Below are positions 7,096-52,690 of a stretch of 64,000 nucleotides of DNA, piece after piece (position 1 is the stretch's first letter; every line of letters starts with the position of its first letter). The DNA lies in the NCBI RefSeq assembly GCF_021869535.1, contig NW_026262637.1, positions 6,758,001-6,822,000 of the forward strand, given 5' to 3'. This DNA comes from Mytilus californianus. Its lineage: Eukaryota. The translations under genes were made by a program, and so were the position numbers. The notes beneath the pieces are model-generated. The model made no database searches. It was not told the origin of the DNA and saw only the letters and a list, made by a program, of their open reading frames with translations.

Positions 7096-7479
7096 AAGTT
7101 CTTATTACGTTCTGGGAAATAATATATTATTAGTATAATAGTCCCAGTTACCTTGTAATGAGTTGAATTGTAATCTGTCCAGGAATTACTTTTCCGTATC
7201 TTCCTGTTGATGAGTTAAATATGTTACCTTTTTATCACGTGGGGGTCTCAACCTACAAATTCGGGCGCAGATGTCCGACTGGGTTTTGTAATCCCCCCAC
7301 GCCATTTATATATTGAATTATGCAATAATCCCTACCCATTTATATATTTCATAAGAGAATCACAACCCATTTATATATATTTCCCGGCTATCGTGACATC
7401 TTATTTCAATGAGATGTTAACCTCATGGGACCCATGATTCATAATATGAGATAAAAAAAATCAGAACACAGTTTTTTTT

Positions 7480-9700: not shown

Positions 9701-9737
<37 letters not shown>
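7480..9737 (+). mobile_element. 5'-truncated, decayed non-LTR retrotransposon (CR1/L2-group LINE) with RT remnants and intact 3' tail
   Basis: Broken ORFs 7755-8135, 8482-9054 and 9032-9478, plus NYRPISILPTVSKIFEK, QSGFRSGHSCNTALL, LDFRKAFDIVNH, GIPQGSILGP and YADD. AATAAA at 9693-9698 is followed by a (TTA)11 tail at 9703-9736. Confidence 0.9.
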
Positions 9738-11225
9738 AATTTCTACCTCCCTGAAATTGCACCCCATTGAAATATTTGACATTTCAAAAAAGTTACCCAT
9801 ACCAACAGGACGTCTCTGTATACTTTTATATAGGAAGAGAACCGCGATTAAGTAAAGGTAAGTAACTCCATTTGCCTCGTTCTCATGACAAGGGCAGATT
9901 TCTTTGGCAGACGATTGGTATATTGGTGATGATGTCAAATTAACAGATTAACGAAAGACCTTTATACCATAAATGAGGAACGACGGCAACCCCTCGAATA
10001 GTATGATCAATTTACGGAATGTTTTGTCACAGTAATACACTATACGTCTATGAAATACACCAAAATAAGTCACCATATGATTATGATTATGTCTTATGAT
10101 ACACAGTCACAGGCACTTGTTTCTGTAAAAACAGGGGTCACCATCATTTTTAAATTTCTTCAAAGAAAAATATTTTGATTCTGATATAATACAGGTTGGA
10201 AACAACCAATTGAGAGATATATTCTGTTGTAGAAAAGAAAAAGAAAAAATTGCCTTTTTAACTTATAAAGCCATGAATGATTAAAGGGGGAAATTCATTA
10301 TATTTGGAAAAACTTTTAATAAGATTACAATACATAAACTATTAATTTCCCCATAGGTGACAATGATAGCCTTTTTTGAGATAGAGACTTTAGAAAGTTA
10401 ATTTTTTTAACGAAACCTTACTACAATTAAAGAAAAGTTATTCGGACAGTATTTTTTGGTCCAAAAAATATAGGTTTCCGTGGCTTTTCTTAACGTAATT
10501 TGTACTTATCTCCCTTGCCTATCAATTCTGCACTTAAAAACATGTGTCTCATCTTAGCGTAGAAAAGACATCTCAGTTCCGTTATGGCTAAGGAAAATAT
10601 ATTATTTTGCCTTTGGTATAATGCAGAAAGTCTCTATTAATAAAAAATAACGGGTGCACATATCGACCAATCAGGATTAGCCATACCCTTAATTCTGAAT
10701 ACCATGTTATCTATCTTCATAAAATGGCTGCGCCCATAATATTTAATGGTTGATTGTAACCTATACAGTATTTAATATTTTCTAAAATCATGCAATTTAT
10801 GGTCCATAAGATGCACAAACATATATGCCACAGATATATCAACCTCAAAACTTTTTCTCATTACTCTATGAATTTTCACAATTTTTTATTTGAGGTGCAG
10901 ACCCCAGTCTAAAAATGAAAAAAAAAATCCTGTTTCTTTTTTAGTAAATGTGGTACTGCTAAAAAGGATAGATCTGAAGATAATGTCCATTTACTCCAAT
11001 GATTCTTTATATGTCATCAAGTACTGATTATATTGATACCAAAACCGATTCAATATGTAACTGCTACGGTGAATTTTATACAACAGTTTTAAAAGAAACC
11101 ATTTTCGTATAAAAGTACATTTTTGAAACAGACTATAGCATTTCAAAATATGAAAAATGTGAAAATATTTGTATTTTAACATTGAAAACTATTTTTTAAC
11201 TTCAAAATGTCATGCCTATTCCAAT

Positions 11226-30016: not shown

Positions 30017-31325
30017 GTGAGTGAAATGATACAACTATGTAATTTATAATTTATATGATGTATTGTGTTTCATTAGAAATGAATGGAATGTATAGAAATT
30101 GTAACAGAGAAAGAAAGCTTGTGTCAGGTGTTTTCATTGCATTTAATTGTCATTCTACTGGAGATAAACCAGTGTTTCATTCACCATAATGTTATGATAT
30201 TTACAAGATAAGAAATAAAATCAGCTAATTACAGGTAAATAATAGACCTTGGCTTTATGAATAGTATTAGGTATATATATATATATACATTATGTACCTG
30301 GCTAATTTGTATCTATAAGGAAAATAAATTTGTATGTATAGGTTCTTCATAATCAATAGGGACAACCAATGTATTAAACTTCAAGGTACAGTGAAACCTG
30401 TAAAAACCGAACCCAGACAATATATATACTTCAATATATACATTTCCACAATTAAACTGTTACTCCTCAGCAACACTTGTTGAAACAAATTTACTAAGCT
30501 TAACACATGTATGTATGAGGAATGTTTCAATTCAAAGTTGATCTGTTCTTTATCTAAATAAGTATTATGTCCTCTATTTATAGCTAATTATTAAAATTCC
30601 CCTCTTTTCCCTGTTTAGAAAGTTCAATGAAGATTATATATGCTTCATATAATTAAACTTCTATATTTGTCATGCATAGCAGTTTCATTATAGTGAACAG
30701 GATATTTGATAATCTTCTATGTATTGTATATAAGATTTCCATTGAAACTTCTATGTGAAAGACAGGATAAAAAATCCAAAATTTGATAAACTGTCAAGTA
30801 TAAACAATACCTTGTAGTCATTGATTTTATATCTGTATTTTGAATACTGCATAAGGCAGTTCAATATTATATCATGAGGATATCTGAAAACAAAACAGAG
30901 GACTATCTTGGTTCACAAAATGGCACTGTGTTAATAATTTGAAATCACGTTTACCTTAATATTTCTTTGTATAAAAATAAGGAGATGTGGTATGACTGCC
31001 AATGAGACAATTATCTACTAAAGTTCAATAAATTATTGTGTATATATTTCATATTTATATATTAATATTCATGACCTAATTGTTTAAATGATATTGTTCC
31101 TGTTATGAAATTTTTAAAACTCATTTTAAATTCAAGAATATATCTCCCTCAGGCAAAGCTCTGATTTCTTGTCCGCATTTGGCTATTATTTAGGTAATTT
31201 TTGGTTTTATCACTCTTCAAATTTTTGGTGGAATTTGATTTTCAATTATTTAGGCTTTGAGCACCACTGAAGAGACATTAATTGTCAAAATGGGCCCCTG
31301 GTGCAGTAAAAATTATAATACATGG

Positions 31326-31345
<20 letters not shown>

Positions 31346-31358
<13 letters not shown>

Positions 31359-33900
31359 GTCTGAATAATAGTCAACGATTTTTCCCACGAGGGCGCTGGA
31401 TCGTTACGAGTAACGATACACGTACACAATAAATAAATTATATAAACGCCTAAAAAGTGTACACAACAACACCAATAACAAAAAAAGGAACTATAAATGT
31501 AATTATTTATAAATATTTCGGATAACAGATATCCTTCATCAGTAAATATGATTGTGATGTTGAATGAATCATATATCAGTCTACTTAGATTAAACTATAC
31601 AAATCTTGAAATTTATACAATAAAAATGTCAAACCGAACATCAGGTAAGACGCTTGCACAATTCTAAATATGTGTTAAACACGACATAGGTTATATGACT
31701 AATTACAACAGAGAGTTCAAATATATGCTTTAAATAAAAATAATAATGTGCGATATGAACTAGCACAATTCTAAAGCTTTAACGGTGACGACAGTTATGA
31801 TGTTACAAGAACGATTGCGTCAATAAGAATTCCAAATAAACAGCACTGAACGATCTAAATTTGTAAATATTTCAAATTTGACAACGGTAGAGTAGTTGCA
31901 ACAGAGTCTGCGTATTTAAACATCGCAAACAAACGGCCGTTAAAATATAATAATAAATTTTGACTAAGGTTAACTAGTTGAACGTGGCTTGGTACTTTTA
32001 CATCCCTCAAAAAATTAAGCAATTTAAATTGGTATATTCAACAGATTTATTTTAGAGATGAGTAAGGTAAAGAAATAGAAACAGAGACTGTAATAAAAAG
32101 TAATACAACCCAAATGTGAAGCACTGCATGGAGTCGAACTACATCTTTTCATTTATCCCATTTGGTGCCAAAGTTGTTAATTTTCTTATCCAAAATCTTT
32201 CCCGAGTGAGTCTATCCTCCCTAGACCAAGCAGAGTTGTGGTCAATGATTGTAATGGTCAGTCGATTGAGATCTGCCTTAGTGTGGCCAGGGGATCTCAA
32301 ATGTCGACTGAGAGGGAGGTCTGGCTTGCATTGGTAGTCGCTACGATGACCATTCATTCGTTTGTGAAACGGCTGTTCTGACTCGCCAACATACTGTTTA
32401 CCACATTTACACTGTAGGAGATACACAACATTTGTAGTCTTGCAATTTACATTGCAAAATATGGTGTATTCTGTACCAGTGGAGTGACTGTTAAAAGTCT
32501 GGGTAACCAGTATTTGTTTGCAAGTCAGACATCGTTTGTTTCCGCAACCCTTGCAAGAGCCCACAGACGAAGAGCCTGCTTGAGAGGATAAATCAGCTCT
32601 CACCAGCAAGTCTTTAAGGCTTTTGGGCCTACGGAAAGCCAGTACAGGTGGCTCGGGAAAGATCTTGGATAGTTTAGGATGTTTTTCGATTTCTTTCCAA
32701 TTTTCGCGGATTAGGTGAGATAAGTTGTCAAATTTTGGATGGTAAGTCAACACAAAAGGCACCCTCCTGTTGACCTTTTTGACTTTATATTGTAAAAGTT
32801 CATCTCGGCTGATGTTGTTAGCACGAGAAAAACCTTTATCAATGTCTTTTCTTTTGTAGCCCCGATGTTTTAGGTGACCGCGAAGTTCTTGTAGTCGTTT
32901 TTTTGCAATATCGTTGGTGGAGCAAATCCTTTTTATTCGTATGGCCTGGCTGTAGGGAATGCTCTTGGTGCAATGTTTAGGGTGACAACTCAAAGGAGAT
33001 AGATATTGATGTTTGTCTGTGGGCTTGCAATACAGATCTGTAAATATGTTTCCATCCCTCACTTGCGTTGTAGTGTCAAGAAATGTGATCTTAGAGTCAG
33101 AGATTTCATATGTGAATTTTATTGAGGGATGGGCATCGTTGGCATGTTGAATGAACAAATTTAGTTCTTGTTCAGTATTATCCCACTTCATGTCAATATC
33201 ATCGATAAATCGGAACCAAGAGAGGGGTTGATAAAGAGAAGAATTGAGAATTCTCTGTTCTAATTTCCCCATAAAAATATTGGCATAAGACGGGGCCATC
33301 TTTGTTCCCATTGCTGTTCCATTAACTTGGAGAAAGTGTTCACCATTGAATGTGAAGTTATTGCATTGTAATACCAAAGTTAGAAGCTGGATGAGACATT
33401 CAGTCGGTGGATGTAAGGTGTTACGAGAGTTCCAGACTTCCCTACAGGCTTCAATACCATCGTCATGGGGGATGTTAGTATAGAGGGAGGTAACATCAAG
33501 CGAGACAAGGATCGTTTCAGGTGGGAGAGGGTTCAAAGATTCCATTTTCTTAAGATAATGTGTTGTGTCTTGTATATAGGATGGTAAATTTTCCACATAT
33601 GGTCTCAGATGAAAGTCAATAAATTCTGATATTTTCTCTGTAGGGTGGTCATTGGCGGAAACAATTGGTCTACCTGGATTATTGACTTTATGTATTTTGG
33701 GCAGAAGATAGAAACGCCCAGGCTTTGATTTTTCAGGTTTTAGATATTCAAATGTGTTTTCATCAATATGTCCCTCTTCACACATGTTTTTCAGGTTTGT
33801 GGTGATCTCTTTGTTGAATTGAGGGGTGGGGTCAGAGTCTAATTTCTTATAAAATCTCTCATCAGAGAGTTGACGTTCTGCCTCTTGAATGTAGTCACAT
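31346..33900 (-). mobile_element. Inverted, 5'-truncated PLE copy (element sequence from the position equivalent to 36734 through the 3' UTR/pseudo-LTR)
   Basis: Reverse complement of the downstream copies. From CDYIQEAE onward its protein sequence is identical to the full ORF. Confidence 0.95.
31504..31548 (-). ncRNA. Type I hammerhead ribozyme-like motif (inverted copy)
   Basis: Reverse complement of 35462-35506. Confidence 0.65.
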
Positions 33901-35662
33901 ATGAAATCTCTGACTCTAAGATCACATTTCTTGACACTACAACGCAAGTGAGGGATGGAAACATATTTACAGATCTGTATTGCAAGCCCACAGACAAACA
34001 TCAATATCTATCTCCTTTGAGTTGTCACCCTAAACATTGCACCAAGAGCATTCCCTACAGCCAGGCCATACGAATAAAAAGGATTTGCTCCACCAACGAT
34101 ATTGCAAAAAAACGACTACAAGAACTTCGCGGTCACCTAAAACATCGGGGCTACAAAAGAAAAGACATTGATAAAGGTTTTTCTCGTGCTAACAACATCA
34201 GCCGAGATGAACTTTTACAATATAAAGTCAAAAAGGTCAACAGGAGGGTGCCTTTTGTGTTGACTTACCATCCAAAATTTGACAACTTATCTCACCTAAT
34301 CCGTGAAAATTGGAAAGAAATCGAAAAACATCCTAAACTATCCAAGATCTTTCCCGAGCCACCTGTACTGGCTTTCCGTAGGCCCAAAAGCCTTAAAGAC
34401 TTGCTGGTGAGAGCTGATTTATCCTCTCAAGCAGGCTCTTCGTCTGTGGGCTCTTGCAAGGGTTGCGGAAACAAACGATGTCTGACTTGCAAACAAATAC
34501 TGGTTACCCAGACTTTTAACAGTCACTCCACTGGTACAGAATACACCATATTTTGCAATGTAAATTGCAAGACTACAAATGTTGTGTATCTCCTACAGTG
34601 TAAATGTGGTAAACAGTATGTTGGCGAGTCAGAACAGCCGTTTCACAAACGAATGAATGGTCATCGTAGCGACTACCAATGCAAGCCAGACCTCCCTCTC
34701 AGTCGACATTTGAGATCCCCTGGCCACACTAAGGCAGATCTCAATCGACTGACCATTACAATCATTGACCACAACTCTGCTTGGTCTAGGGAGGATAGAC
34801 TCACTCGGGAAAGATTTTGGATAAGAAAATTAACAACTTTGGCACCAAATGGGATAAATGAAAAGATGTAGTTCGACTCCATGCAGTGCTTCACATTTGG
34901 GTTGTATTACTTTTTATTACAGTCTCTGTTTCTATTTCTTTACCTTACTCATCTCTAAAATAAATCTGTTGAATATACCAATTTAAATTGCTTAATTTTT
35001 TGAGGGATGTAAAAGTACCAAGCCACGTTCAACTAGTTAACCTTAGTCAAAATTTATTATTATATTTTAACGGCCGTTTGTTTGCGATGTTTAAATACGC
35101 AGACTCTGTTGCAACTACTCTACCGTTGTCAAATTTGAAATATTTACAAATTTAGATCGTTCAGTGCTGTTTATTTGGAATTCTTATTGACGCAATCGTT
35201 CTTGTAACATCATAACTGTCGTCACCGTTAAAGCTTTAGAATTGTGCTAGTTCATATCGCACATTATTATTTTTATTTAAAGCATATATTTGAACTCTCT
35301 GTTGTAATTAGTCATATAACCTATGTCGTGTTTAACACATATTTAGAATTGTGCAAGCGTCTTACCTGATGTTCGGTTTGACATTTTTATTGTATAAATT
35401 TCAAGATTTGTATAGTTTAATCTAAGTAGACTGATATATGATTCATTCAACATCACAATCATATTTACTGATGAAGGATATCTGTTATCCGAAATATTTA
35501 TAAATAATTACATTTATAGTTCCTTTTTTTGTTATTGGTGTTGTTGTGTACACTTTTTAGGCGTTTATATAATTTATTTATTGTGTACGTGTATCGTTAC
35601 TCGTAACGATCCAGCGCCCTCGTGGGAAAAATCGTTGACTATTATTCAGACGTTTTATATAT
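33895..35662 (+). mobile_element. Partial direct PLE copy (3' RT, GIY-YIG and 3' UTR) serving as the upstream pseudo-LTR/partial tandem
   Basis: Matches the full copy from 37519 onward at an offset of 3624. Confidence 0.95.
35462..35506 (+). ncRNA. Type I hammerhead ribozyme-like motif in the PLE pseudo-LTR
   Basis: Stem I TATTTA (35462-67) / TAAATA (35501-06), core CTGATGA (35468-74), stem II GGATA-tctgt-TATCC, GAAA (35491-94), minimal stem III. Minimal hammerheads are an established feature of PLE pseudo-LTRs. Confidence 0.65.
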
Positions 35663-35738
35663 ATTTTTATTCTTAGTCTGTATCGAGTGATTTATCACGC
35701 GATCCGATTTTTCTTACAGCCTTACCACCAGGCAAACT

Positions 35739-38495
35739 ATGTCTTTTTTTAAAAAGCTTAGAGCTTTGAGTCTTAAAATAGTTAAAACCGAACATCATGT
35801 ATCAAATTTAAAAACTTATCTGTCTCAGGGTATTGTTCCGATGGGGCTTATTTTGAAAGCTTCACCCCTTACCACCGGTGAAAAATCTATCAGATTTATG
35901 GATAGATGGAATAATATTCTCCACAGTAGTTCCGTGAAATTGATGGATCTATTACACGCTGAAGCGTCTCATAAACATTTAAATTTACAAACTAGTTATA
36001 ACCATCTTTACAACAAATCATGCCAAGAACTTTCCGGTCCTGAATTGCTCACCATCAACGAGCGCCTCCATGACATCTTGCGCATTGAATCCCGGAAATT
36101 ACACAAAAAACAAATTAATAAATTTAAACGAGACGGCGTACTTTTAGACACTGTTGTAAGAGAGCAGACCACTTTAACTCTCAATCGTACCATCATAACC
36201 GGAAAAAAATCCCGGAATCGCCGATTCAGGAGAAAAAAACAAAGTTGCATGAACTCTACAAACACTGTAGTCAATTTGTCTTCAGTTGCTTTGTCGGAGA
36301 CCGAGACTAAGGTACTGTCAAAAGGTCTTAATTTTTGTCCCACGCCGGGCAAAATAGATTCTATACTTTTGGAGGATGACCTAGACAATTTAGCAAGATC
36401 CCTCAGAATCAAGGAATATTTTTCTAAGGACACCACAAAAAGTACCACTGATAGTGACACAAGTGATCTCGACTCAGATGACGACCAAGAGGATGTCGAT
36501 ATTCCCAGATTCAGGAAAAAAAGTTCATGGATTCCTAAACCCAGTAAATGTGCTACTTTAGAACATATTATTGACAAAATTAAATCCGACGTAACACATC
36601 TGTCCACTGCCACTTCCCAAACATTCAACAATTTATCGTCTGAAGAAAATGAAGCTGTGCGGCTACTTAAAAACAGAGACGACATTATAATAAAACCAGC
36701 AGATAAAGGTAGCGCTGTTGTCGTCATGGACAAATGTGACTACATTCAAGAGGCAGAACGTCAACTCTCTGATGAGAGATTTTATAAGAAATTAGACTCT
36801 GACCCCACCCCTCAATTCAACAAAGAGATCACCACAAACCTGAAAAACATGTGTGAAGAGGGACATATTGATGAAAACACATTTGAATATCTAAAACCTG
36901 AAAAATCAAAGCCTGGGCGTTTCTATCTTCTGCCCAAAATACATAAAGTCAATAATCCAGGTAGACCAATTGTTTCCGCCAATGACCACCCTACAGAGAA
37001 AATATCAGAATTTATTGACTTTCATCTGAGACCATATGTGGAAAATTTACCATCCTATATACAAGACACAACACATTATCTTAAGAAAATGGAATCTTTG
37101 AACCCTCTCCCACCTGAAACGATCCTTGTCTCGCTTGATGTTACCTCCCTCTATACTAACATCCCCCATGACGATGGTATTGAAGCCTGTAGGGAAGTCT
37201 GGAACTCTCGTAACACCTTACATCCACCGACTGAATGTCTCATCCAGCTTCTAACTTTGGTATTACAATGCAATAACTTCACATTCAATGGTGAACACTT
37301 TCTCCAAGTTAATGGAACAGCAATGGGAACAAAGATGGCCCCGTCTTATGCCAATATTTTTATGGGGAAATTAGAACAGAGAATTCTCAATTCTTCTCTT
37401 TATCAACCCCTCTCTTGGTTCCGATTTATCGATGATATTGACATGAAGTGGGATAATACTGAACAAGAACTAAATTTGTTCATTCAACATGCCAACGATG
37501 CCCATCCCTCAATAAAATTCACATATGAAATCTCTGACTCTAAGATCACATTTCTTGACACTACAACGCAAGTGAGGGATGGAAACATATTTACAGATCT
37601 GTATTGCAAGCCCACAGACAAACATCAATATCTATCTCCTTTGAGTTGTCACCCTAAACATTGCACCAAGAGCATTCCCTACAGCCAGGCCATACGAATA
37701 AAAAGGATTTGCTCCACCAACGATATTGCAAAAAAACGACTACAAGAACTTCGCGGTCACCTAAAACATCGGGGCTACAAAAGAAAAGACATTGATAAAG
37801 GTTTTTCTCGTGCTAACAACATCAGCCGAGATGAACTTTTACAATATAAAGTCAAAAAGGTCAACAGGAGGGTGCCTTTTGTGTTGACTTACCATCCAAA
37901 ATTTGACAACTTATCTCACCTAATCCGCGAAAATTGGAAAGAAATCGAAAAACATCCTAAACTATCCAAGATCTTTCCCGAGCCACCTGTACTGGCTTTC
38001 CGTAGGCCCAAAAGCCTTAAAGACTTGCTGGTGAGAGCTGATTTATCCTCTCAAGCAGGCTCTTCGTCTGTGGGCTCTTGCAAGGGTTGCGGAAACAAAC
38101 GATGTCTGACTTGCAAACAAATACTGGTTACCCAGACTTTTAACAGTCACTCCACTGGTACAGAATACACCATATTTTGCAATGTAAATTGCAAGACTAC
38201 AAATGTTGTGTATCTCCTACAGTGTAAATGTGGTAAACAGTATGTTGGCGAGTCAGAACAGCCGTTTCACAAACGAATGAATGGTCATCGTAGCGACTAC
38301 CAATGCAAGCCAGACCTCCCTCTCAGTCGACATTTGAGATCCCCTGGCCACACTAAGGCAGATCTCAATCGACTGACCATTACAATCATTGACCACAACT
38401 CTGCTTGGTCTAGGGAGGATAGACTCACTCGGGAAAGATTTTGGATAAGAAAATTAACAACTTTGGCACCAAATGGGATAAATGAAAAGATGTAG
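35739..38495 (+). CDS. PLE polyprotein: reverse transcriptase plus C-terminal GIY-YIG endonuclease, 918 aa, intact
   Basis: [34 protein letters not shown] and WFRFIDD (RT); Cys-rich linker [12 protein letters not shown], which points to the Neptune clade; [17 protein letters not shown]...RMNGH (GIY-YIG). Confidence 0.97.
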   Translation: MSFFKKLRALSLKIVKTEHHVSNLKTYLSQGIVPMGLILKASPLTTGEKSIRFMDRWNNILHSSSVKLMDLLHAEASHKHLNLQTSYNHLYNKSCQELSGPELLTINERLHDILRIESRKLHKKQINKFKRDGVLLDTVVREQTTLTLNRTIITGKKSRNRRFRRKKQSCMNSTNTVVNLSSVALSETETKVLSKGLNFCPTPGKIDSILLEDDLDNLARSLRIKEYFSKDTTKSTTDSDTSDLDSDDDQEDVDIPRFRKKSSWIPKPSKCATLEHIIDKIKSDVTHLSTATSQTFNNLSSEENEAVRLLKNRDDIIIKPADKGSAVVVMDKCDYIQEAERQLSDERFYKKLDSDPTPQFNKEITTNLKNMCEEGHIDENTFEYLKPEKSKPGRFYLLPKIHKVNNPGRPIVSANDHPTEKISEFIDFHLRPYVENLPSYIQDTTHYLKKMESLNPLPPETILVSLDVTSLYTNIPHDDGIEACREVWNSRNTLHPPTECLIQLLTLVLQCNNFTFNGEHFLQVNGTAMGTKMAPSYANIFMGKLEQRILNSSLYQPLSWFRFIDDIDMKWDNTEQELNLFIQHANDAHPSIKFTYEISDSKITFLDTTTQVRDGNIFTDLYCKPTDKHQYLSPLSCHPKHCTKSIPYSQAIRIKRICSTNDIAKKRLQELRGHLKHRGYKRKDIDKGFSRANNISRDELLQYKVKKVNRRVPFVLTYHPKFDNLSHLIRENWKEIEKHPKLSKIFPEPPVLAFRRPKSLKDLLVRADLSSQAGSSSVGSCKGCGNKRCLTCKQILVTQTFNSHSTGTEYTIFCNVNCKTTNVVYLLQCKCGKQYVGESEQPFHKRMNGHRSDYQCKPDLPLSRHLRSPGHTKADLNRLTITIIDHNSAWSREDRLTRERFWIRKLTTLAPNGINEKM

Positions 38496-39085
38496 TTCGA
38501 CTCCATGCAGTGCTTCACATTTGGGTTGTATTACTTTTTATTACAGTCTCTGTTTCTATTTCTTTACCTTACTCATCTCTAAAATAAATCTGTTGAATAT
38601 ACCAATTTAAATTGCTTAATTTTTTGAGGGATGTAAAAGTACCAAGCCACGTTCAACTAGTTAACCTTAGTCAAAATTTATTATTATATTTTAACGGCCG
38701 TTTGTTTGCGATGTTTAAATACGCAGACTCTGTTGCAACTACTCTACCGTTGTCAAATTTGAAATATTTACAAATTTAGATCGTTCAGTGCTGTTTATTT
38801 GGAATTCTTATTGACGCAATCGTTCTTGTAACATCATAACTGTCGTCACCGTTAAAGCTTTAGAATTGTGCTAGTTCATATCGCACATTATTATTTTTAT
38901 TTAAAGCATATATTTGAACTCTCTGTTGTAATTAGTCATATAACCTATGTCGTGTTTAACACATATTTAGAATTGTGCAAGCGTCTTACCTGATGTTCGG
39001 TTTGACATTTTTATTGTATAAATTTCAAGATTTGTATAGTTTAATCTAAGTAGACTGATATATGATTCATTCAACATCACAATCA

Positions 39086-39130
39086 TATTTACTGATGAAG
39101 GATATCTGTTATCCGAAATATTTATAAATA
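39086..39130 (+). ncRNA. Type I hammerhead ribozyme-like motif (3' copy)
   Basis: Identical to 35462-35506; CTGATGA at 39092-39098. Confidence 0.65.
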
Positions 39131-39327
39131 ATTACATTTATAGTTCCTTTTTTTGTTATTGGTGTTGTTGTGTACACTTTTTAGGCGTTTATATATATAT
39201 ATATATATACCTTGAAATTAATTTCAAATTGCAACTACCTTTCTCCCATAAAAGGGTATTATAAATGACTACATCATAATCTTGTTGACCAAAGGTATTT
39301 GCAATAATTATGATTTTATCTTTACAG

Positions 39328-43879: not shown

Positions 43880-44259
43880 GTTTTCTTAGTAATATCAGTT
43901 GATATCTTGTCATCAGAACAAGACACAAACTGTGAACTATTATGTGCAAAAGTAGATATAATCTGAGTAAAAGCTATCTATATTAGGGCTTATTACAAAC
44001 CACAAGAAAACGATACTGATAGTATCAATGAAATAAGTAGATTATTACAGAGAATACCAACACACAGTAATATTTGACTACTTTGAGATTTCAACCTCCC
44101 TAAATATGACTTGGTCAAACAAGAACTAAAACCCAATTGCAAATTCACAAATACATACAACAACTTTTTTTATATCATGAATGACCATAATCTTGAACAG
44201 GTGGTACATATACCAACAAGACAGGAAAACACACTAGATCTGTTGTACCTAAATCAGCC
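43880..44259 (+). pseudogene. Decayed LINE, APE endonuclease region (left part, interrupted by the TTAA transposon)
   Basis: NLEQVVHIPTRQENTLDLLYLNQP continues in frame after 51167 as LVQNIKTLPSLGTSDHDIV (APE C-terminal PTR..LD...SDH). Confidence 0.8.
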
Positions 44260-44363
44260 TTAAGGTGAGAGGTACGTAAATGAACGCCTCTAACGGAAAA
44301 CGGGAAAATTTGCGTTCGTTGTTATGAGAGTTATCCCCCTTACACCAGAAAAATATTTCCAAG

Positions 44364-47300
44364 ATGTCGGAAGATATTCCGCTTCGTCGGAAAAATGGTC
44401 AATTCGGTGGAAAAGTATTCAATTCTTCTCATCAAAATATAACAAAAAGTGTAGTTATTGTAAGTGAAATGTCTTGTCCGAGTGAAACATTGCTTCCCTC
44501 CCAAGAAAATGAAAGTAACTTGGCATGGCGTGATGGTCGAAGAGTGGTTGAGTTGGGGTTACTAGCTGACCAACTTAAAGCTTGCAAGGACTGCTATGCA
44601 CCATTATTTTTACACAACTGCTCAAAAGAACAAAGATACGGTCTCGGAAGTATTTTGTATATACCTTGTGGTAGCTGTCCCTACACAAACTTAATAAACA
44701 CTGGTAAACGGCACAGATCAGAGACTTCAAAAAAGGGAATGTTGATATGGGACGTGAATACAAAGTGTAGTATGGGTAAGAATATTACAAACACTTGCAT
44801 ATACACACAATAACAAATTAAAGCTCACACTAATACGTTGACTTTTTTTATTTTCATTCTAATTTTTGAAGTCGAAGACTCACACTTACAATATTGCATA
44901 CAAAGTCAAAGAGATAAATTCGTTTCTCAAAAGTAAAACAACTGTCAACGGTTGAAGGTATTCAACTCTTAACAAAAAAGAGGAAATACTCTTTTATATG
45001 CTTAATAATTATTATTCTTGATTTGACATTCGTGTTAGACAATCATTTTCTCACACAAATATAAACATTTGGATGTTCATACAAATAAAAAACCGTTGTT
45101 TACAGTGCTTTCTTTCACGTCCGCAATATGGTCTATAAATAGAAGTGGAAAGTGCTAGTACCGAGAGTGAAAAAAATAGGATTAAAACAAATAATTTTTA
45201 CTAAAAATATTGAACAAGAATTTTAAATTGTTGCGTGAAATGAAATTTACAAAATGTAATGTCGGAAATTACTTCCGAAGGGTAATTGAGCAAGAGAAAA
45301 GGAAAAGAAAATTGAATGCGAATCGAAATTGGGATGACATTGTGCACGGACAAACGGGAAGTAAAATGGTCTTTCAAAATAAACAAAAATTTATTACAAA
45401 AAAGTTTACACGTTTCTTTTAATTCAATTTGAAAGAAATATGATGAATAATGAGTTTCAAGCATGAAAATACGAGAAGGGAAAATTACGATTCCGCTGCA
45501 CGAAAATTATCCCTTACCGCCGCTTCAAAAATAAAATGATAAGCCAAGTTCATATAGTATACAGAAAATTCAGAAATTTGTGCGTGCATTGATTAATTTA
45601 TTTTGAAATAGGAAAAGTTATGTCACTAGTTATTGCGATTTCAGTAAAAAATGTATACAAATGTAGCAATTAGAATTTAGAATTAGAGGTTTTATTTTTT
45701 TTGCGATACGTATTTTTTAAGTACGAACATTTTATTAAAATGTCTTTCCAATAAACTTAAATTTTATTACATAAATCGGATATTTATGAAAGAAATCTTT
45801 GTTTAGCCTATTTAGATGCAGGAATGGGTCCACACCAGACAGTCAATTTCCTTGCTGGCATTAACATCCCCCCAATAGCAGTTAAGAATTTAAAGATAAG
45901 AGAAAGAGAAATCGGCAAATCCATAGAAAAATGTGCTGAAATGTCTTGTCAGAAAGCTCTACAAGAAGAAATAGATTTAAGCAGGTAATTCAAAATTTTA
46001 TATCTATTAAAAATAAGAAGATGTGGTATGATTGACATGCACTAAGACAACTCTCCACGATAGACATAATAGCACAAAATAACAACTGCATGTATAAGAC
46101 CGTAAGTCCTTCAATAATGAGAAAAACCCATATCGAATAGTCAGCCTCAAAAGGCCCCGAAATACTGTTAAACAATTCAAACGAGAAAAACTAACGGTCT
46201 GATTTATGTACAAAATAATAGACGAAAAACAAATATGTAACACAGCAACACACGACAACCACTGAATTACAGGCTTCTGACCTGGGACAAGCACATACAG
46301 AAGGTGGCGGGGTTAAACTTGTTTGAAGGCACTTACCCTTCCCAAAACTTGGGATAGTGGTGTCTCTAGTTTATAGTAATTAACCAATTTTAGAAAATGT
46401 CTTTATGAAGAAATAAATCATTGCAAATGGTGAACATCTAAAATTAAATCTTGAAGTGTCAATGGTTCAGTATTATGAAAAAATCAAACGAAATTCAGGC
46501 TTCTCCTCACAATCAATAATATATATAATGGATCCAGGCATCTCCTTACAATCAATAATATATATAATGGATCCAGGCATCTCCTCACAATCAATAATAT
46601 ATAAAATGGATGATAGTTTATAGATATATTGAAAACAAAGTTAATCTGATTGCCAGCTTGTAAGATTAAATAAACCTTGTTTATATAAACGGCCCATTAA
46701 CAAGAATCATATATTTTTAGAGATGAAGATGATCATTCAAATGGAACTTCAATAACAGTTTCTTTTGATGGTGCTTGGCAGAAAAGAGGAAGTGGAAGAA
46801 GCTACAGTAGCTTGACAGGTATACCTATATGCACTGGAAAACGATAAATAGCTAAAACAGAGCCCACTCCTCACACCCGAAAAAACGCTTCTTATTTGGT
46901 TAATGATTTTTTATGCCTAGAGGCTAGCCAAAGGGGGAATTAAGTGTTACCCTTGACCGTCCTTCCGTCCGTCCCATTTTTGTTTTCACAATCTTCTCAC
47001 CCACATTTAATAAAAGTAATCCTCAATGTTGAACACAACAATTTGCAGACATGCAGGGTTCAAATTTAGGCAGTGAGCCGCTTACTATTCTAGAGTTATG
47101 CCCCCTTTTAAATGGGAAAATTGTAAATGTTTTCGTTTCCCCACTCTATCTTACGTTTGCCTCATGTAAATTTTATGAATCTCATAAACATTACTGAGAA
47201 CCACAAATATTTCAAAGCTTTGGGTGGGGGCATTTGTGTACCCAGACAAATTCTTCTTTTCATTTTTGATATATATTTTTCAATAAGAATGCTGTTATAA

Positions 47301-50058
47301 ATTCTTATCGATTTTAAATTAATCTTATAATTATATTGGTAGGTCATGCTACAATGATAGGTGAAAAAACTGGAAAATGTGTGAGTCAAGGAACTAAATC
47401 AGCAGACTGCAGAAAATGTATGTATGTGGATGAAAAGGGAGATGGACATCACGATTGTAGGAAAAATCATACTGGAAGTGCAAAGTCGATGGAGTCAAAC
47501 TTAGCCGTTGAGATGGTGCAGGAGCTGCAGTGCAAAGGATGCAAAGTTTCCTGTATAATAATGGATGACGATACCACTACTCTGGCTAGACTAAAAGAAA
47601 ACATTAATTCTGACATTGTTAAAAGATCAGACAGAAATCACCAAAGAAAAAATATTGTTAGTGACTTATACCGCTTACATAAAAAACACAAAGGTAAATT
47701 GTCAACTAGTACTATAAGCTACTTGACAAAAGATTTAGACTATGCAATAGCCCAAAACAAGAACCGTGCAGAACAATTGAGCCAGAATATTTATTCAATC
47801 ATTCCCCATTCTTTTGGTGACCATTCTAAATGTGACTTATCGTGGTGTAACTACCATAAAGATCCAGAAAATTACAAACATAAAAGTCTTCCATATGGCA
47901 AAAATTTAAACGGAGAGGAAATGTTTGCCGATTTGTCAAAATTGTTTGATACTTACGCAAAGAATTCAGATAAATTAGCTAACTGTGGCAGCTCGCAAGG
48001 AAACGAATCCTTAAATCAAATAATCGCGTTAAAGGCACCAAAAGCAAAGCATTTTGGGAGTAGTGAATCCCTTCCTTTCCGAGTATGCGTGGGAGTAATT
48101 CAGAAAAACGAAGGTCGTTCTTATATACCACAAGTATATGAAGCTCATAAATTGTCACCTGGAAAATTTACAGTAATGCATACGGCAAAAATAGACAAAA
48201 AGCGCAAGCATGACAAAGTAAATGCAAGTACCCGGGAGGCGAAGAGAAAAAGACTTGTCAAAAAGGGAAAATTCAACTTGAATCTAAAGGCCAAAGAAAT
48301 ACGAGAAGGCGTAACATATGCTACCTCTATTTCTGCACCAGCAAAATCGAGTGAGAATGCTGAAGATATTTCACACATTCCTGATCCTGAACCAGAAGTG
48401 ACGGAAGATCCTATGTCTTTGAAAGACGAAACATTTGTTTACTTTGACCTTGAAACTACAGGGTTCGGTAAGAAATTAATTGTTTTTGTTGTTGGCTTTC
48501 TTTTATTATATTGTCAATAGAATCGTTATCCCTTTTCGGCTACAGGTTATTTTCTTATTTATTAAGAATTTAAACAGCCAGATCTTCTTTGATTTGAATC
48601 TAAGGTGACTAATCGGAAATTTATAAACAAGCGAGACCAGTCTGTTAACGTTACATGTAGGCATAATATTTTATATTTCGTATTGTCATTCAAAAAGGGA
48701 CAAAAGACAACTTGGAATAAAATGTGTTGCGTTTCTATACGACCTGAGTATATTACTAGAAATCTTTATAGTATCACAGTATATGAAATTTCTTAGTGTT
48801 TTTTTTTATATATCAATACTTAGGAGTTTGAATATAGTAATAATATCACATGTCTTTAACATTATGCATACATGTATGCACCTCTGCACGTTTAATAACA
48901 CTTGTCTCTTCAATAAATCAATTTATCTTATTTCTGATTTTATATATATAGTTACAGTATTTAGAAGAAATAAATTAAAAACAAAGAATAAATAGAGAAA
49001 TTAACTGAAATACAGAAATTCAGAGGAGACTACAAGATGAAAAAAAAAAACCCTTCACAACCGGAATCGCTATCATGTATAACGGGAAACAACAAATGTT
49101 TTTTTTTTCCTGCATGGGACTGTATGCGTTTCCGTTTGTATTGCTAAGTAATATAAACGATTGTAGTTTGTTACTGTGTGCATCGTAAGATGAATGAAAG
49201 GACGGCAATTTTGTAAGTATTAATATCAAAGACTTATTTTGAATTGTTTCGTTTTCAGGTACTGATTGTGATATTATTCAATTAGCTGCAGCATATGACA
49301 ACCAAAATTATAATCGGTATATGGTACCCGGTCAGCGTATCTCGCCATCTGCTTCTAAAGTAACCGGATTTTCAAAAAGTGGTTTAATTTTGTATAAAAA
49401 CGGGGAAATAATGCAGACGGACGAAGAAAGTGAAATTTTTAAACAGTTTATTTCTTGGCTTCCCAAAAAATGCATTTTGATTGGTCACAATTCAAAAATT
49501 TTTGATTCCAGAATTTTGACTAAGGCTTTACAAAATTATAATATCATGAAAGATTTTGAATTAAAATGCGGTGGATTTATTGACACCTTATCATTGACTA
49601 AAGAACTACTACCAGACAGAAAGACAAATAAGCAGTCATACAACCAGGAATCACTTGTAAAAGATATTGTTGGCATAAATTATGATGCACACAATGCCAT
49701 TGGCGATGTGCAATCCCTGCAACAGCTGATCAACACGCTAAAAGTCTCTCCAAGAATTCTAGAAAAACACAGCTTCTCTGTTCAGTACACAGTAAACATG
49801 ATCAGTAAGCTGCAGCTAACTAAATCTAGACTGGATACATTTAGCAACATGCCATCTACTTTTTGTTCAAAGACAATGCTGAACAAAATTGCCAGATCTG
49901 GTTTACGGTTAAACCATCTTATCCTTGCAGGAAATAGAGGAGGTGTTGATGGCATACGCGAATTGCTAACCGAACAGTTTGACGGGAAGCCCCGAGTTAC
50001 TAAAGACAAGAAGATACTAGACTCGATTTCAGAACACATTATGTCATTGAAAAACTAG
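44364..50058 (+). CDS. Spliced transposase-exonuclease fusion, 870 aa: join(44364..44775,45807..45984,46721..46818,47343..48467,49259..50058)
   Basis: All introns are GT-AG, phases 1,2,1,1 match, total 2613 nt, no internal stop. N-terminal CxxC..CxxC. Putative DDE: SFDGAWQKRG / IMDDDTT / SDRNH / QGNES. DEDDh: YFDLETTGFG / GHNSKIFD / FIDTL / HNAIGD. Confidence 0.9.
46008..46370 (+). mobile_element. Dispersed repeat copy (same family as 3335-3720) inside intron 2 of the transposase gene
   Basis: Collinear similarity to 3335-3700. Confidence 0.85.
46496..46612. repeat. 3 x 39-bp tandem repeat in intron 2
   Basis: CAGGC(A/T)TCTCC(T)..CAATCAATAATATATATAATGGATC starts at 46496, 46535 and 46574. 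Confidence 0.9.
46907..47255 (+). mobile_element. Short HINE-like element in intron 3 of the transposase gene
   Basis: TTTTTTATGCC start, CCGTCCTTCCGTCCGTCC microsatellite, 3' GGGTGGGGGCATTTGTGTACCC terminus. Confidence 0.6.
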
Positions 50059-51167
50059 AAAAAACATTGTCTGAACGCATATACTTTTGTTATTGTATTA
50101 CACGTTTAGTTTCTAGACGAAACACATTACAATTTTAAAATATTTGCATCAATTCACAATTTTCACTAAGATTAATTGAACAAAACCACGGATAAGAGAA
50201 AAGAGAAATGATAATTTGCATCAAACTTCCAAAATATCTTTTGTGTTGGGTTTTTACCTATCAATTACGTGTATCCCCTTTGCTTTTATAATATTAAACA
50301 CACCATTTAATTTTAGGATGAAAAATTAAATCAGTACTATTGGGCTCGATGTATGTGTTTATTTTTTTGTGTTGTGTTCATGTGCCATTGAAAACATAAT
50401 TATCAATACATATATGTGACCTACATCTACGTCGTACGACGGTCCATCGGCACATTGATGACTATTCAATTATTCTGCAACGATCAGGTAAAAGAAATGT
50501 TTGTTTTGTTTACTACTGTTTGTCTTTTGTTTTTTTTTTACAGTTTTTCCGTGGCATTGTCAGTTTGTTTTCGACTTTGGTACATTTCGTTTCCCTTATT
50601 GTGCAGCAGCAAATATTTCATGTATTTTCGGGTCGAAAATATAATCAATGAATGTATATCGTCATTATAATCAAAGAGACACCTTGATGTAGCGGTCGTT
50701 GTCTTTATTTGACAAGATTTCTATGTTGGTGACGATTCTGCTGATTGAGACTTGACGTTGCGTAATCCTTTTCGGCGACGTCATGTAATTTCTATCTTTT
50801 TTCAGTCAGCAACACCCTTTCAACGGCTGATATATAAAAAGAGAGTCCGGTAACCATAGGAAAATTATATATCAATGGAAAGGAAAATTCTATCATAAAA
50901 ACATTTAATTTTTATAGAAAAATTGTAGGAATGGTTTTAACTGCAGATTAAATTAAGCTTGAAATTTCTTATTTTTTGCGTAAATTTGACGTTATGTCTA
51001 TGTACTTCATGGTGTTATTCTAACATTTTCAAATGACTGTAACTTTTAAATTAGAACGGTTACCCACTCAAATTTTTCAATTTTTCTGTTTATTTTTAGA
51101 AGTTCTACGTGCATACAATTTCTTAAAAAAATCGGTGGACAAGCCATTTACGTACCTGTTACCTTAA

Positions 51168-52690
51168 CTTGTACAAAACATAAAAACACTACCTAGTCTT
51201 GGAACATCAGACCATGACATTGTCTTTCATGAAATGAACATAAAATGGGTAGAAAAATAAATCAATTCAAAAAAGCAGACTGGGACAAAATAGGTACAGA
51301 AGTGAAGAACTTCCAAGATGAATACTTTTCTCTGGGAATAACAAACACCACTACAGAAGAAAAGGGGCTGCTGATAAAAAAAAATACAACATATAGCAGA
51401 CAAAAATATTCCATCTAAAATATTGAAACAAAAACTAAATATTCCTTGGCTAACACTAGAAATAAAGAGACTACTAAGAAAAAGAGACAGAATATATCAG
51501 AAATTAAAATCAACAAAAGCAGAGCATAAATCAGATATTATCAAAAATTACAGATCTTTAAAACACCTAGTGCACTAAAAGCTAAGAAAATCATACAAGA
51601 AATATATAGAAAATATTATAATTGAAGACAGTAAACTGGAAGATAAACCCAGCAAGAAATTTTGATAATTCATAAAAAACAGAAAAGTGAAAACATAGAT
51701 GTATCACCACTAAAGGTAAATGGTATAACAAAAACAAACCCTCAAGATCAGGCTGAAGCATTGACTCTCAGTTTCACTCAGCACTTACCATACCTAAACC
51801 TTTAAAATTATCACACATTTGTGAACTGAAATAATTAGAATCAACAACAACACACACATTTGAAATGAAGCAAATCAATAATATCACTTCAGAAGGAACA
51901 TCCAAATTACTAAAAAACTTAAACCCATCTAAAGCAATTGGTCCAGACAACATATCACCTCATTTTTTAAAAGAAGTACACCATGAAATCTCTGCACCTG
52001 TAATATCTGACTTGTTTAATTCATCAGTAAATACAGGCACAGTACCAAACAACTGGAGAGAGGCCATGGTTGGTTACAGTATTCAAAAAAGGAGCAAAAT
52101 CTGAACCCGAAATTATAGGCCTATCTCCCCAACCTGTATTCTTAGTAAATCGTTAGAACACATTATTGAATCATCTATAATGAAACATCTAGATAATTAT
52201 AATTTACCATGTTTACCATACCCACTGCAGCATAGGTTCAGATCAAAAGTTAGCTGTGAAACACAACTACTAACATTCACACAACAAATACTCGATTATA
52301 TGGCAAACGGTAAACAAACTGACATAGTTGTTATGGACTTCTCAAAAGCATTCGATAGAGTAGACCACCAAAGACTTATCTTAAAGCTAAAATGCATGGG
52401 TATAAACAATAAAACATCAGACTGGATTAAGGCATGGTTATCTTACAGATTTCAAAAAGTGGTAGTTGACAGTCACACATCAAGTAGCGTTCCTCAAAGC
52501 TCTGTTCTTGGTCCATGTCTTTTCTTTATTTACATTAATGACATGCCAGACAACCTCAAAAGTAATGTTCGCCTCTTTGCAGATGATACATTGTGTATTT
52601 ATCAGTATCATCACTTACTGACTGCCACACCCTTCAACAGACTTACATAAATTGGAACAATGGGAGCAAGCATGGTTAAGATTTTAAATG
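51168..52690 (+). pseudogene. Decayed LINE (CR1/Jockey group), rest of APE, linker and RT; 3'-truncated
   Basis: SDHDIV, KAIGPDNISPHFLK, NYRPIS, SCETQL, DFSKAFDRVDH, VPQSSVLGP and LFADD across frameshifted ORFs 51865-52104 and 52180-52650. Confidence 0.9.

What the first reader, a model, noticed from the sequence alone, without database searches (positions are those of the whole stretch)
48430..50058. Transposase fused in frame to a catalytically complete DEDDh 3'-5' exonuclease
Seen: the last exons encode ExoI YFDLETTGFG, ExoII GHNSKIFD, FIDTL and ExoIII HNAIGD, followed by a helical tail (KIARSGLRLNHLILAGNRGGVDGIRELL..GKPRVTK). ExoI is split from the rest by intron 4. Established: D-E..D..H..D defines DnaQ/TREX1-like DEDDh exonucleases, and exuperantia and the PML C-terminus carry related, often inactive, folds. 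Inference: a cut-and-paste element carrying its own proofreading-type exonuclease. It might trim donor or target ends, destroy excised DNA fragments and so evade cytosolic DNA sensing, or act on RNA. It could also be a source of host Exu/PML-like domains. This is my best candidate for an under-described system in the window. Kolobok sub-lineages with accessory nucleases may already be catalogued, so novelty needs checking.
Basis: partly seen in the sequence, partly recalled or inferred. Interest (0 to 1): 0.85.

Follow-up and report, generated by a model that had tools for sequence, protein, structure and literature searches.

The report
Mussel KolobokD transposase–exonuclease fusion
This is an intact jumping gene of the California mussel whose cutting enzyme is fused to a working-looking DNA-trimming exonuclease; the design was already described in 2022 ("KolobokD"), but its exonuclease module is closely related to the exonuclease module of the vertebrate PML/Plex9 proteins.

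Summary
Window 44264-51163 is a 6.9-kb TTAA-flanked cut-and-paste transposon in Mytilus californianus, nested in a decayed LINE. Its intact five-exon gene encodes 870 aa: a Kolobok-type DDE transposase, a basic linker, a DEDDh 3'-5' exonuclease (EXO) and a SAM-like PML_C tail.

- **Splicing:** intron 4 (48468-49258) splits ExoI from the rest. Contigs of three runs, one a declared RNA-seq library, remove it exactly. They come from related copies, not this one.
- **Active site:** D598, E600, D687 and H749 are invariant and D754 at least 90% conserved in 63 homologues with 36% mean identity.
- **Selection:** dN/dS against a non-orthologous M. coruscus copy is 0.14 for EXO and 0.13 for the tail.
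- **Fold:** the AF2 model (pLDDT 96.6) matches zebrafish Plex9.1 (Z 27.6), Exuperantia (25) and TREX1/2 (22).

Novelty of the architecture is low. Kojima & Bao 2022 (PMC9587614) named this lineage KolobokD, so this is a new member of a known kind. The scan also noted two more such elements elsewhere in this genome.

One point appears in no paper I could search. The whole EXO+PML_C module aligns end to end (33-34% identity) with shark and paddlefish PML-like proteins. All vertebrate PML-like/Plex9 sequences form one clade whose sister group is transposase-linked. The direction of transfer is unresolved because the tree is unrooted.

The exonuclease's role is inferred: trimming 3' ends during transposition.

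The parts
44260..44263 (.). left TTAA target-site duplication
   Evidence: The LINE reading frame is continuous once the element and one TTAA are removed. Homology to the M. coruscus copy stops exactly here.
44264..44282 (+). left terminal inverted repeat GGTGAGAGGTACGTAAATG (5'-GG terminus)
   Evidence: (I5). It is identical in M. coruscus L001.
44364..44775 (+). exon 1: start codon and N-terminal Cys-rich region (CKDC...CGSC); start of PF20700
45807..45984 (+). exon 2 (acceptor corrected to 45805-45806)
46721..46818 (+). exon 3: first catalytic D (SFDGAWQKRGSG, D213)
   Evidence: The exon 3-exon 4 junction is seen as a loose end of an X1 contig.
47343..48467 (+). exon 4: CCHC zinc finger, second D (IMDDD), DxxH (SDRNH), HHCC zinc finger, catalytic E (GNES), basic NLS-like linker (48197-48271), ExoI FDLETTG (48443-48463)
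48468..49258 (+). intron 4 (791 nt, GT..AG, phase 1), between ExoI and the rest of the exonuclease
   Evidence: It is skipped exactly by contigs of runs X1, X3 and X7, with zero depth inside.
49259..50058 (+). exon 5: rest of the DEDDh exonuclease (ExoII 49486-49506, ExoIII 49690-49707), SAM-like PML_C tail (about 49867-50046), stop codon
50059..51144 (+). 3' UTR and subterminal non-coding part of the element
   Evidence: Transcript contigs reach about 50308. No further ORF with homology was found.
51145..51163 (-). right terminal inverted repeat (GGTAACAGGTACGTAAATG on the - strand; ...CC-3' terminus)
   Evidence: The same two mismatches occur in the M. coruscus copy.
51164..51167 (.). right TTAA target-site duplication

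Best explanation
Window 44264-51163 is an intact, apparently autonomous member of the KolobokD lineage of Kolobok DNA transposons in Mytilus californianus. It inserted at a TTAA inside an old LINE. One spliced mRNA encodes a single 870-aa protein with these parts in order:
- an N-terminal Cys-rich region;
- a DDE transposase core with the Kolobok DxxH motif and two zinc fingers;
- a conserved bipartite basic (NLS-like) linker;
- a catalytically complete DEDDh 3'-5' exonuclease with a SAM-like (PML_C) domain, the two-domain EXO/SAM arrangement seen in Exuperantia and reported for PML-1 PXL (PMC13659232).

Shown: the element boundaries, the gene structure, splicing of the fusion, conservation of the active site, purifying selection on every part, and the fold.

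Inferred: because the exonuclease is covalently tethered to a probably nuclear transposase, it most likely acts in cis on 3' ends of DNA made during excision or integration. It could trim non-transferred-strand or flank overhangs, or clean the TTAA gaps. Its closest solved relative, Plex9.1, has been crystallised bound to ssDNA (9mrd), and Plex9 proteins are reported as active exonucleases. I put about 0.9 on the identity and about 0.4 on this particular role.
For: - **Boundaries:** a 19-nt TIR pair, 2 mismatches, flanked by TTAA on both sides (I5). The LINE endonuclease frame (...TLDLLYLNQP*LVQNIKTLPSLGTSDHD...) is restored when the element plus one TTAA is removed. The M. coruscus copy has the same TIRs and TTAAs in unrelated flanks.
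- **Second family:** a divergent family with PF20700 and EXO-PML_C ORFs has three copies at least 99.5% alike, each TTAA|GGTGGAG...CTCCACC|TTAA.
- **Gene:** five exons, all GT-AG, 870 aa, no stop codon. It equals XP_052088170.1 from residue 144.
- **Splicing:** the joint 48467/49259 appears in X1, X3 and X7, and X7 is a declared RNA-seq library.
- **Kolobok signature:** in 16 transposases the invariant residues include D304/D306, D326-x-x-H329, C252/C255/C268 (H266 is at least 90% conserved), H385/H390/C393/C398 and E451. These match the description in PMC9587614.
- **Exonuclease:** invariant D16, E18, H99, D105, D131 and H167, with D172 at least 90% conserved, in 63 sequences. AF2 pLDDT is 96.6. 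Matches are Plex9.1 at Z 27.6, rmsd 1.2 A, 36% identity; Exu at Z 25; TREX1/2 at Z 22.
- **Two-domain arrangement:** the whole module superposes on an Exuperantia cluster model at TM 0.85 over residues 1-288.
- **Selection:** dN/dS is 0.16 for the transposase, 0.20 for the linker, 0.14 for EXO and 0.13 for the tail, at dS 0.20.
- **Recurrence:** 29 of 39 long homologues carry the transposase. Atlas clusters with PF20700+RNase_T+PML_C occur in Mollusca and Cnidaria.
Against: - No biochemical data exist for any Kolobok transposase or KolobokD exonuclease, so the end-processing role is inference only.
- The transcripts that show splicing are 90-97% identical to this copy and carry indels not divisible by three. 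They come from other, probably degenerate, copies or from a sister species. Expression of this exact copy is not shown.
- The two TIRs differ at 2 of 19 positions, although identically so in M. coruscus.
- The NLS is predicted from a basic motif only.
- I could not compare the element with Repbase KolobokD consensus sequences.
Confidence: 0.85

Rival explanations
1. The exonuclease works like TREX1/Plex9 rather than as an end-processing subunit. It would degrade free DNA: excised or abortive transposon DNA, micronuclear or cytosolic DNA, or retroelement cDNA. That would lower the host damage response or DNA sensing, or suppress competing retrotransposons.
For: The closest solved relatives are Plex9.1 and TREX1/2. 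Plex9 proteins suppress L1 retrotransposition and complement a TREX1 knockout (PMC10123124). The mussel genome around the element is full of LINEs and Penelope-like elements.
Against: The domain is always fused behind a transposase through a conserved basic NLS-like linker. That points to a nuclear, transpososome-bound enzyme rather than a free cytosolic one. No experimental data exist. A benefit to the host is hard to select for at the level of a single transposon family.
Confidence: 0.2
2. The EXO-SAM module acts on or binds RNA, as in Exuperantia (mRNA localisation) or ERI1-type RNases. It could target the element's own mRNA to the germline or trim small RNAs that silence it.
For: The EXO/SAM two-domain arrangement is that of Exu. 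Kojima & Bao also report similarity to ERI1.
Against: Exu is a pseudonuclease that has lost the DEDD residues (PMC13659232). Here all of them are conserved across 63 sequences. Sequence similarity to Exu (E 3e-3) is far weaker than to the Plex9-type exonucleases (1.8e-24).
Confidence: 0.07
3. The fusion is an annotation or reading artefact. Exon 5 would belong to a neighbouring host exonuclease gene, or the locus would be a domesticated immobile host gene.
For: Many database homologues are short EXO-PML_C-only proteins (111 of the 150 best). Prokaryote-style gene callers split the two halves.
Against: The exon 4-exon 5 joint is seen in RNA contigs. ExoI lies in the transposase exon, so exon 5 alone lacks two catalytic residues. 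TIRs and TTAA enclose both halves. Copies sit at non-orthologous sites in two species. The short homologues interleave with fused ones throughout the tree.
Confidence: 0.02

Closest known systems
KolobokD lineage of the Kolobok superfamily (Kojima & Bao 2022, Mob DNA 13:24, PMC9587614)
   Same: It has a TTAA target duplication, 5'-RR...YY-3' termini, and a DDE transposase with the DxxH motif. It has a zinc finger before the catalytic E, a CCHC zinc finger after the first D, and a DEDDh (DnaQ) exonuclease downstream of the transposase. It occurs in molluscs, and it is similar to Exu and TREX.
   Different: Nothing essential differs. The paper gives one short section without a survey, a domain dissection or expression data. 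Added here: the SAM-like PML_C tail, the intron that splits ExoI, splice evidence, dN/dS, a confident structural model, and the close tie to vertebrate PML-like/Plex9 proteins. Placement against Repbase consensus sequences could not be tested.
Fish Plex9 ('PML-like exon 9', annotated TREX4 or exodeoxyribonuclease III) and the C-terminal DEDDh exonuclease of PML (PMC10123124); PML-1 PXL domain (PMC13659232)
   Same: Plex9.1 is the closest solved structure (9mrc/9mrd, Z 27.6, rmsd 1.2 A, 36% identity). All DEDDh residues are the same. The PML_C tail scores 55 bits, against 48-69 bits for shark, bowfin and paddlefish PML-like proteins. End-to-end alignment with paddlefish and shark PML-like proteins gives 34% and 33% identity, E 5e-50 and 7e-42.
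   Different: Those are host genes, either free-standing or fused behind a TRIM/RBCC module. Here the partner is a transposase inside TIRs. Teleost Plex9 lacks the tail, and amniote PML has lost the catalytic residues.
Drosophila Exuperantia EXO-like + SAM-like domains (PDB 5L80)
   Same: It has the same two-domain EXO/SAM arrangement (Foldseek alignment of 331 columns; VIA Z 25; Exu cluster model TM 0.85 over residues 1-288).
   Different: Exu is a pseudonuclease and RNA-binding host protein. Sequence similarity is weak (E 3e-3, 18-21% identity).
TREX1/TREX2 3'-5' DNA exonucleases
   Same: They share the DEDDh fold and catalytic residues (Z about 22; phmmer 1e-6).
   Different: Identity is only 20-24%. 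They have no SAM-like tail, are dimeric host enzymes, and are not transposon-encoded.
Other Kolobok lineages with accessory nucleases: KolobokE (PD-(D/E)xK lambda-exonuclease-like) and KolobokP (His-Me finger endonuclease)
   Same: They follow the same principle: a Kolobok transposase joined to, or accompanied by, a second nuclease.
   Different: The nuclease folds and polarities differ. Lambda-exonuclease-type enzymes are 5'-3', and His-Me is an endonuclease.

Membership tests
Kolobok superfamily / KolobokD lineage | [quoted passage not shown] | tested here: met
   TTAA lies on both sides here, in the M. coruscus copy and in three copies of a second family. The empty-site frame of the host LINE is restored.
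Kolobok superfamily / KolobokD lineage | Termini 5'-RR ... YY-3' (unlike piggyBac CCC...GGG) | tested here: met
   5'-GGTGAG...GTTACC-3'. The second family has GGTGGAG...CTCCACC.
Kolobok superfamily / KolobokD lineage | DDE triad with the C/DxxH signature between the second D and E | tested here: met
   D213 (SFDGAW), D304-306 (IMDDD), D326-R-N-H329 and E451 (GNES). The second D, DxxH and E are invariant in 16 transposases; the first D lies in a column that only some of the 16 rows cover.
Kolobok superfamily / KolobokD lineage | Zinc finger between DxxH and the catalytic E, plus a CCHC zinc finger after the first D (Kolobok P, E, D and 5 only) | tested here: met
   H385/H390/C393/C398 are invariant. 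C252/C255/C268 are invariant and H266 is at least 90% conserved. The definition is in PMC9587614.
Kolobok superfamily / KolobokD lineage | DEDDh (DnaQ) exonuclease encoded with the transposase | tested here: met
Kolobok superfamily / KolobokD lineage | Transposase groups with the Repbase KolobokD families in a phylogeny | not testable with these tools
DEDDh (DnaQ-like) 3'-5' exonucleases | ExoI D-x-E, ExoII D, ExoIII H-x4-D | tested here: met
   D598, E600, D687, H749 and D754. They are invariant or at least 90% conserved in 63 sequences.
DEDDh (DnaQ-like) 3'-5' exonucleases | RNase H-like alpha/beta fold | tested here: met
   AF2 pLDDT 96.6 and pTM 0.90. Z is 27.6 to Plex9.1 and 22 to TREX1/2.
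DEDDh (DnaQ-like) 3'-5' exonucleases | Metal-dependent 3'-5' exonuclease activity | not testable with these tools
   This needs a biochemical assay.
PML C-terminal exonuclease / Plex9 / PXL (EXO+SAM) family | EXO domain followed by the PML_C (PF25244) SAM-like domain | tested here: met
   PML_C scores 55.2 bits against a cut-off of 27.1. End-to-end alignment to paddlefish and shark PML-like proteins.
PML C-terminal exonuclease / Plex9 / PXL (EXO+SAM) family | Host gene: TRIM/RBCC N-terminus (PML) or a free-standing single gene (Plex9), vertically inherited in jawed vertebrates | tested here: not met
   The N-terminal partner is a transposase. The module lies inside TIRs and at non-orthologous sites. 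It falls outside the vertebrate clade (97 SH-aLRT). It is therefore a relative of the family, not a member.
Mutator/MULE superfamily (suggested by the Pfam name PF20700 'Mutator-like transposase') | 8-11-bp target duplications and MULE-type TIRs (from my own knowledge of MULEs) | tested here: not met
   The duplication is a 4-bp TTAA and the TIR is 19 nt. The Pfam name does not reflect the superfamily.
piggyBac superfamily (the other TTAA-specific transposons) | piggyBac DDD transposase and CCC...GGG termini | tested here: not met
   Pfam gives PF20700 and no piggyBac-type family. The termini are GG...CC.

The most novel reading that the evidence does not exclude
The EXO+SAM (PML_C) module of vertebrate PML (the C-terminal exonuclease/PXL domain) and of fish Plex9/'TREX4' exonucleases descends from a domesticated KolobokD transposon module. 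A retrotransposon-restricting and nuclear-body protein would then have taken its nuclease from a DNA transposon near the origin of jawed vertebrates.

Evidence not excluding it:
- End-to-end 33-34% identity between the mussel transposon module and shark and paddlefish PML-like proteins, the same level as between KolobokD families.
- All 31 vertebrate sequences form one clade (97), and its sister group is transposase-linked (joint support 97) within a much deeper transposase-linked radiation.
- PML is reported to appear first in jawed vertebrates (PMC10123124), while KolobokD occurs in cnidarians, molluscs and arthropods, with related EXO-PML_C proteins in a hemichordate.
- No searchable paper links PML or Plex9 with transposases.

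The tree is unrooted. A root on the vertebrate stem would instead make the host lineage the sister, or the donor, of KolobokD.
Probability: 0.45. Interest if true: 0.7.

Novelty: new member of a known kind. Interest (0 to 1): 0.4.

Why it matters
As a transposon annotation this is ordinary. It is a well-preserved KolobokD element in a mussel, and the lineage was named in 2022.

It matters for two reasons. First, nobody has tested why a cut-and-paste transposase would carry a 3'-5' exonuclease. This intact copy, with defined ends and conserved catalytic residues, is a ready substrate for such tests. Second, the module is the closest non-vertebrate relative found here of the PML/Plex9 exonuclease domain. 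It keeps both the active site and the SAM-like tail. The origin of the PML C-terminus thereby becomes a testable question: domestication of a transposon nuclease, or capture of a host gene by the transposon.

Tried and rejected
- **Pfam name:** the 'Mutator-like' label suggested a MULE. I rejected that on the TTAA duplication, the termini and the Kolobok zinc-finger signature.
- **piggyBac:** rejected; there is no piggyBac domain and the termini are GG...CC.
- **Separate host gene for exon 5:** rejected.
- **Full-length PML, Exu or TREX1 sequences for rooting:** not obtained. Two searches for longer or more distant relatives returned no full-length PML, Exu or TREX sequence. I did not type PDB sequences in by hand. 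The tree therefore stays unrooted.
- **Careful IQ-TREE search:** it did not finish after 743 s, so only quick-tree SH-aLRT supports are given.
- **KolobokD family names or Mytilus KolobokD entries:** a search of the supplements of PMC9587614 found none.
- **Literature:** searches for KolobokD, PML+Kolobok, exuperantia+transposase, TREX3/4 and PDB codes found no paper linking PML or Plex9 to transposons. The library holds only open-licence PMC papers and bioRxiv.
- **Raw-read RNA run X21:** it gave no reads on the exons.
- **Other copies in the window:** none.
Full report
**What is there.**

The window is AT-rich animal DNA (32% GC). RefSeq protein XP_052088170.1 of Mytilus californianus is identical to residues 144-870 of my gene model, so the source is the California mussel.

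On the + strand, five exons with canonical GT-AG borders give an uninterrupted 870-codon reading frame:
- exon 1: 44364-44775
- exon 2: 45807-45984
- exon 3: 46721-46818
- exon 4: 47343-48467
- exon 5: 49259-50058

I first placed the exon 2 acceptor at 45822. I moved it to 45807 because the extra AYLDA restores an xxLDAGxG motif that homologues keep.

ExoI FDLETTG ends exon 4. A 791-nt phase-1 intron (48468-49258) follows. Exon 5 carries GHNSKIFD, FIDTL, HNAIGD and the helical tail.

**It is a transposon, and its ends are exact.**

A 19-nt inverted repeat (GGTGAGAGGTACGTAAATG / GGTAACAGGTACGTAAATG) sits at 44264-44282 and 51145-51163. Each arm abuts a TTAA.

Removing the element and one TTAA restores a continuous, though decayed, LINE endonuclease reading frame...TLDLLYLNQP*LVQNIKTLPSLGTSDHDIVFHEM....

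A copy in M. coruscus (L001, protein P0151) has the same TIRs with the same two mismatches, and the same TTAAs. Its flanks are unrelated, and similarity ends exactly at the TTAA on both sides.

A second, divergent family comes from an unidentified eukaryote (L002-L004). It has a PF20700 ORF followed by an EXO-PML_C ORF. Its three copies are at least 99.5% alike, lie at different loci, and each reads TTAA|GGTGGAG...CTCCACC|TTAA. So wherever I could look, this DDE+DEDDh pairing is bounded by TTAA and GG...CC termini.

**Classification.**

Pfam calls the N-terminal 400 residues 'Mutator-like transposase' (PF20700). The element nevertheless meets each published Kolobok criterion:
- a TTAA target duplication;
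- RR...YY termini;
- a DDE triad with DxxH;
- a zinc finger between DxxH and E;
- a CCHC zinc finger after the first D, restricted to a few lineages that include KolobokD.

These rest, with the definitions in PMC9587614.

That paper (Kojima & Bao 2022) already names the lineage with a DEDDh exonuclease KolobokD. It reports the lineage from molluscs, arthropods and cnidarians. It notes similarity to Exuperantia, TREX and ERI1, and suggests the nuclease degrades transposition intermediates from the 3' end. It is the only paper in the library that uses the name. The architecture is therefore known but barely studied.

**The fusion is real.**

Contigs from three public runs, one a declared RNA-seq library, skip 48467 to 49259 exactly at GT..AG, with zero depth across the intron. 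One contig also runs from exon 3 into exon 4.

These transcripts are only 90-97% identical to the window. They carry indels not divisible by three, so they come from other copies or sister species. They prove the splice pattern of the family, not expression of this copy.

An exhaustive HMMER search with exon 5 found 1868 cluster representatives at E below 1e-3. Among the best 150, 29 of the 39 proteins of at least 400 aa have the Kolobok transposase N-terminal of EXO. Named examples come from Mytilus species, Saccostrea, Mizuhopecten, and the wasps Trichogramma and Venturia. ESM-Atlas clusters with PF20700+RNase_T+PML_C are mostly molluscan or cnidarian.

**The exonuclease looks active and is under selection.**

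In 63 EXO-tail sequences with 36% mean identity, these columns are invariant: D16, E18, H99, D105, D131 and H167. D172 is at least 90% conserved. In the full protein these are D598, E600, H681, D687, D713, H749 and D754.

AlphaFold2 on that alignment gives pLDDT 96.6 and pTM 0.90. Structural matches are:

| Target | Z | Other measures |
|---|---|---|
| Zebrafish Plex9.1 (9mrc/9mrd) | 27.6 | rmsd 1.2 A over 180 residues, 36% identity |
| Exuperantia | 25 | |
| TREX1/2 | about 22 | |

The full two-domain model superposes on an Exuperantia cluster model over residues 1-288 at TM 0.85. The tail is a bona fide PML_C domain (55 bits, cut-off 27).

Against the non-orthologous M. coruscus copy (dS 0.20), dN/dS by region is:

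| Region | dN/dS |
|---|---|
| Transposase | 0.16 |
| Linker | 0.20 |
| EXO | 0.14 |
| Tail | 0.13 |

All parts are equally constrained. That is what one expects if the whole fusion protein is needed for propagation.

**How it probably works.**

The domain order is shown. It runs: Cys-rich N-terminus, DDE core, a conserved bipartite basic stretch (KKRK...KRKRLVKKGK; family consensus KRK...KRKRL), EXO, then a SAM-like domain.

The role is inferred. A 3'-5' exonuclease tethered to a probably nuclear transposase most plausibly acts on 3' ends produced during excision or integration. Its nearest relatives make DNA the likelier substrate: Plex9.1 has been crystallised bound to ssDNA (9mrd), TREX1 degrades DNA, and Plex9 proteins are reported as active exonucleases.

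Two rivals stand. One is a TREX1/Plex9-like clearing of free DNA or retroelement cDNA, since Plex9 suppresses L1 (PMC10123124). The other is an Exu- or ERI1-like role on RNA, which is less likely because Exu has lost the catalytic residues that are conserved here. None of this can be settled by computation.

**The part that may be new.**

By sequence, the module is far closer to fish Plex9-type exonucleases (phmmer 1.8e-24) than to TREX1 (1e-6) or Exu (3e-3).

A profile search recovered proteins annotated PML-like, or as partial PML, from sharks, paddlefish and bowfin, and a partial PML from sturgeon. All of them keep both EXO and PML_C. The mussel module aligns with them end to end: 34% identity and E 5e-50 to Polyodon, 33% and 7e-42 to Heptranchias. 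Their PML_C scores are no better than the transposon's.

In a quick maximum-likelihood tree of 99 modules, all 31 vertebrate sequences form one group (SH-aLRT 97). That group joins 12 transposase-linked sequences and one distant row (P0186), a set that includes a second Mytilus family and the ERZ family with proven TTAA/TIR ends (joint support 97). The whole sits among many deep transposase-linked lineages.

The tree is unrooted, and I could not obtain Exu or TREX outgroups. A root on the vertebrate stem would make the host lineage sister to KolobokD, or its donor, so the direction of transfer is open. The taxonomic pattern favours domestication only moderately: PML is reported as gnathostome-only, while KolobokD occurs in cnidarians, molluscs and arthropods.

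The PML/Plex9 papers never mention transposases. No searchable paper combines PML with Kolobok in this sense.

**Verdict.**

The architecture itself is already described (KolobokD), so this copy is a new member of a known kind. Interest is moderate. It rests on the untested function of the tethered exonuclease and on the possible transposon ancestry of the PML/Plex9 exonuclease module.

The scan's first readers also noted two more such elements elsewhere in this genome, which I did not check.

Noticed in passing
window 47059-47127 (intron 3): A core of about 40 nt has very high depth in RNA runs: word depth up to about 9000 in X1 and 62 raw reads in X21. Reads run on unlike the window on both sides. 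It is probably a piece of an abundant expressed repeat inside the intron.
   Followed up: no
window 46496-46611 (intron 2): A 39-bp unit is repeated three times in tandem at 94% match.
   Followed up: no
window 43990-44259 and 51168-52200: The transposon sits inside a decayed LINE. The endonuclease-domain frame is split by the insertion and carries several stop codons. A reverse-transcriptase-like ORF (KAIGPDNISPHFLKE...) follows from about 51865.
   Followed up: partly
L001 10092-14116 (M. coruscus copy): Intron 4 is about 4 kb there against 791 nt in the window, so something was inserted into the intron. The copy also has a 1-nt deletion near the C-terminal end of the gene. A weak Phage_integrase-like ORF lies upstream at L001 4228-4707.
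   Followed up: no
L002-L004 (ENA ERZ25072999, unidentified eukaryote), about 4246-10880: A second family with PF20700 and EXO-PML_C ORFs, 6.6 kb, has three copies at least 99.5% identical at different loci, each flanked by TTAA. It looks recently active. Its exonuclease falls in the sister group of the vertebrate PML-like/Plex9 clade.
   Followed up: partly
proteins P0003, P0005 (Anabrus simplex) and P0189 (Merluccius polli): These long proteins hold three to five tandem copies of this EXO domain and show no transposase similarity. They may be arrays of duplicated exonuclease units or merged gene models.
   Followed up: no
window 30017-39327: Other first-stage notes describe a Penelope-like insertion in an intron upstream of this element. 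I did not examine it.
   Followed up: no
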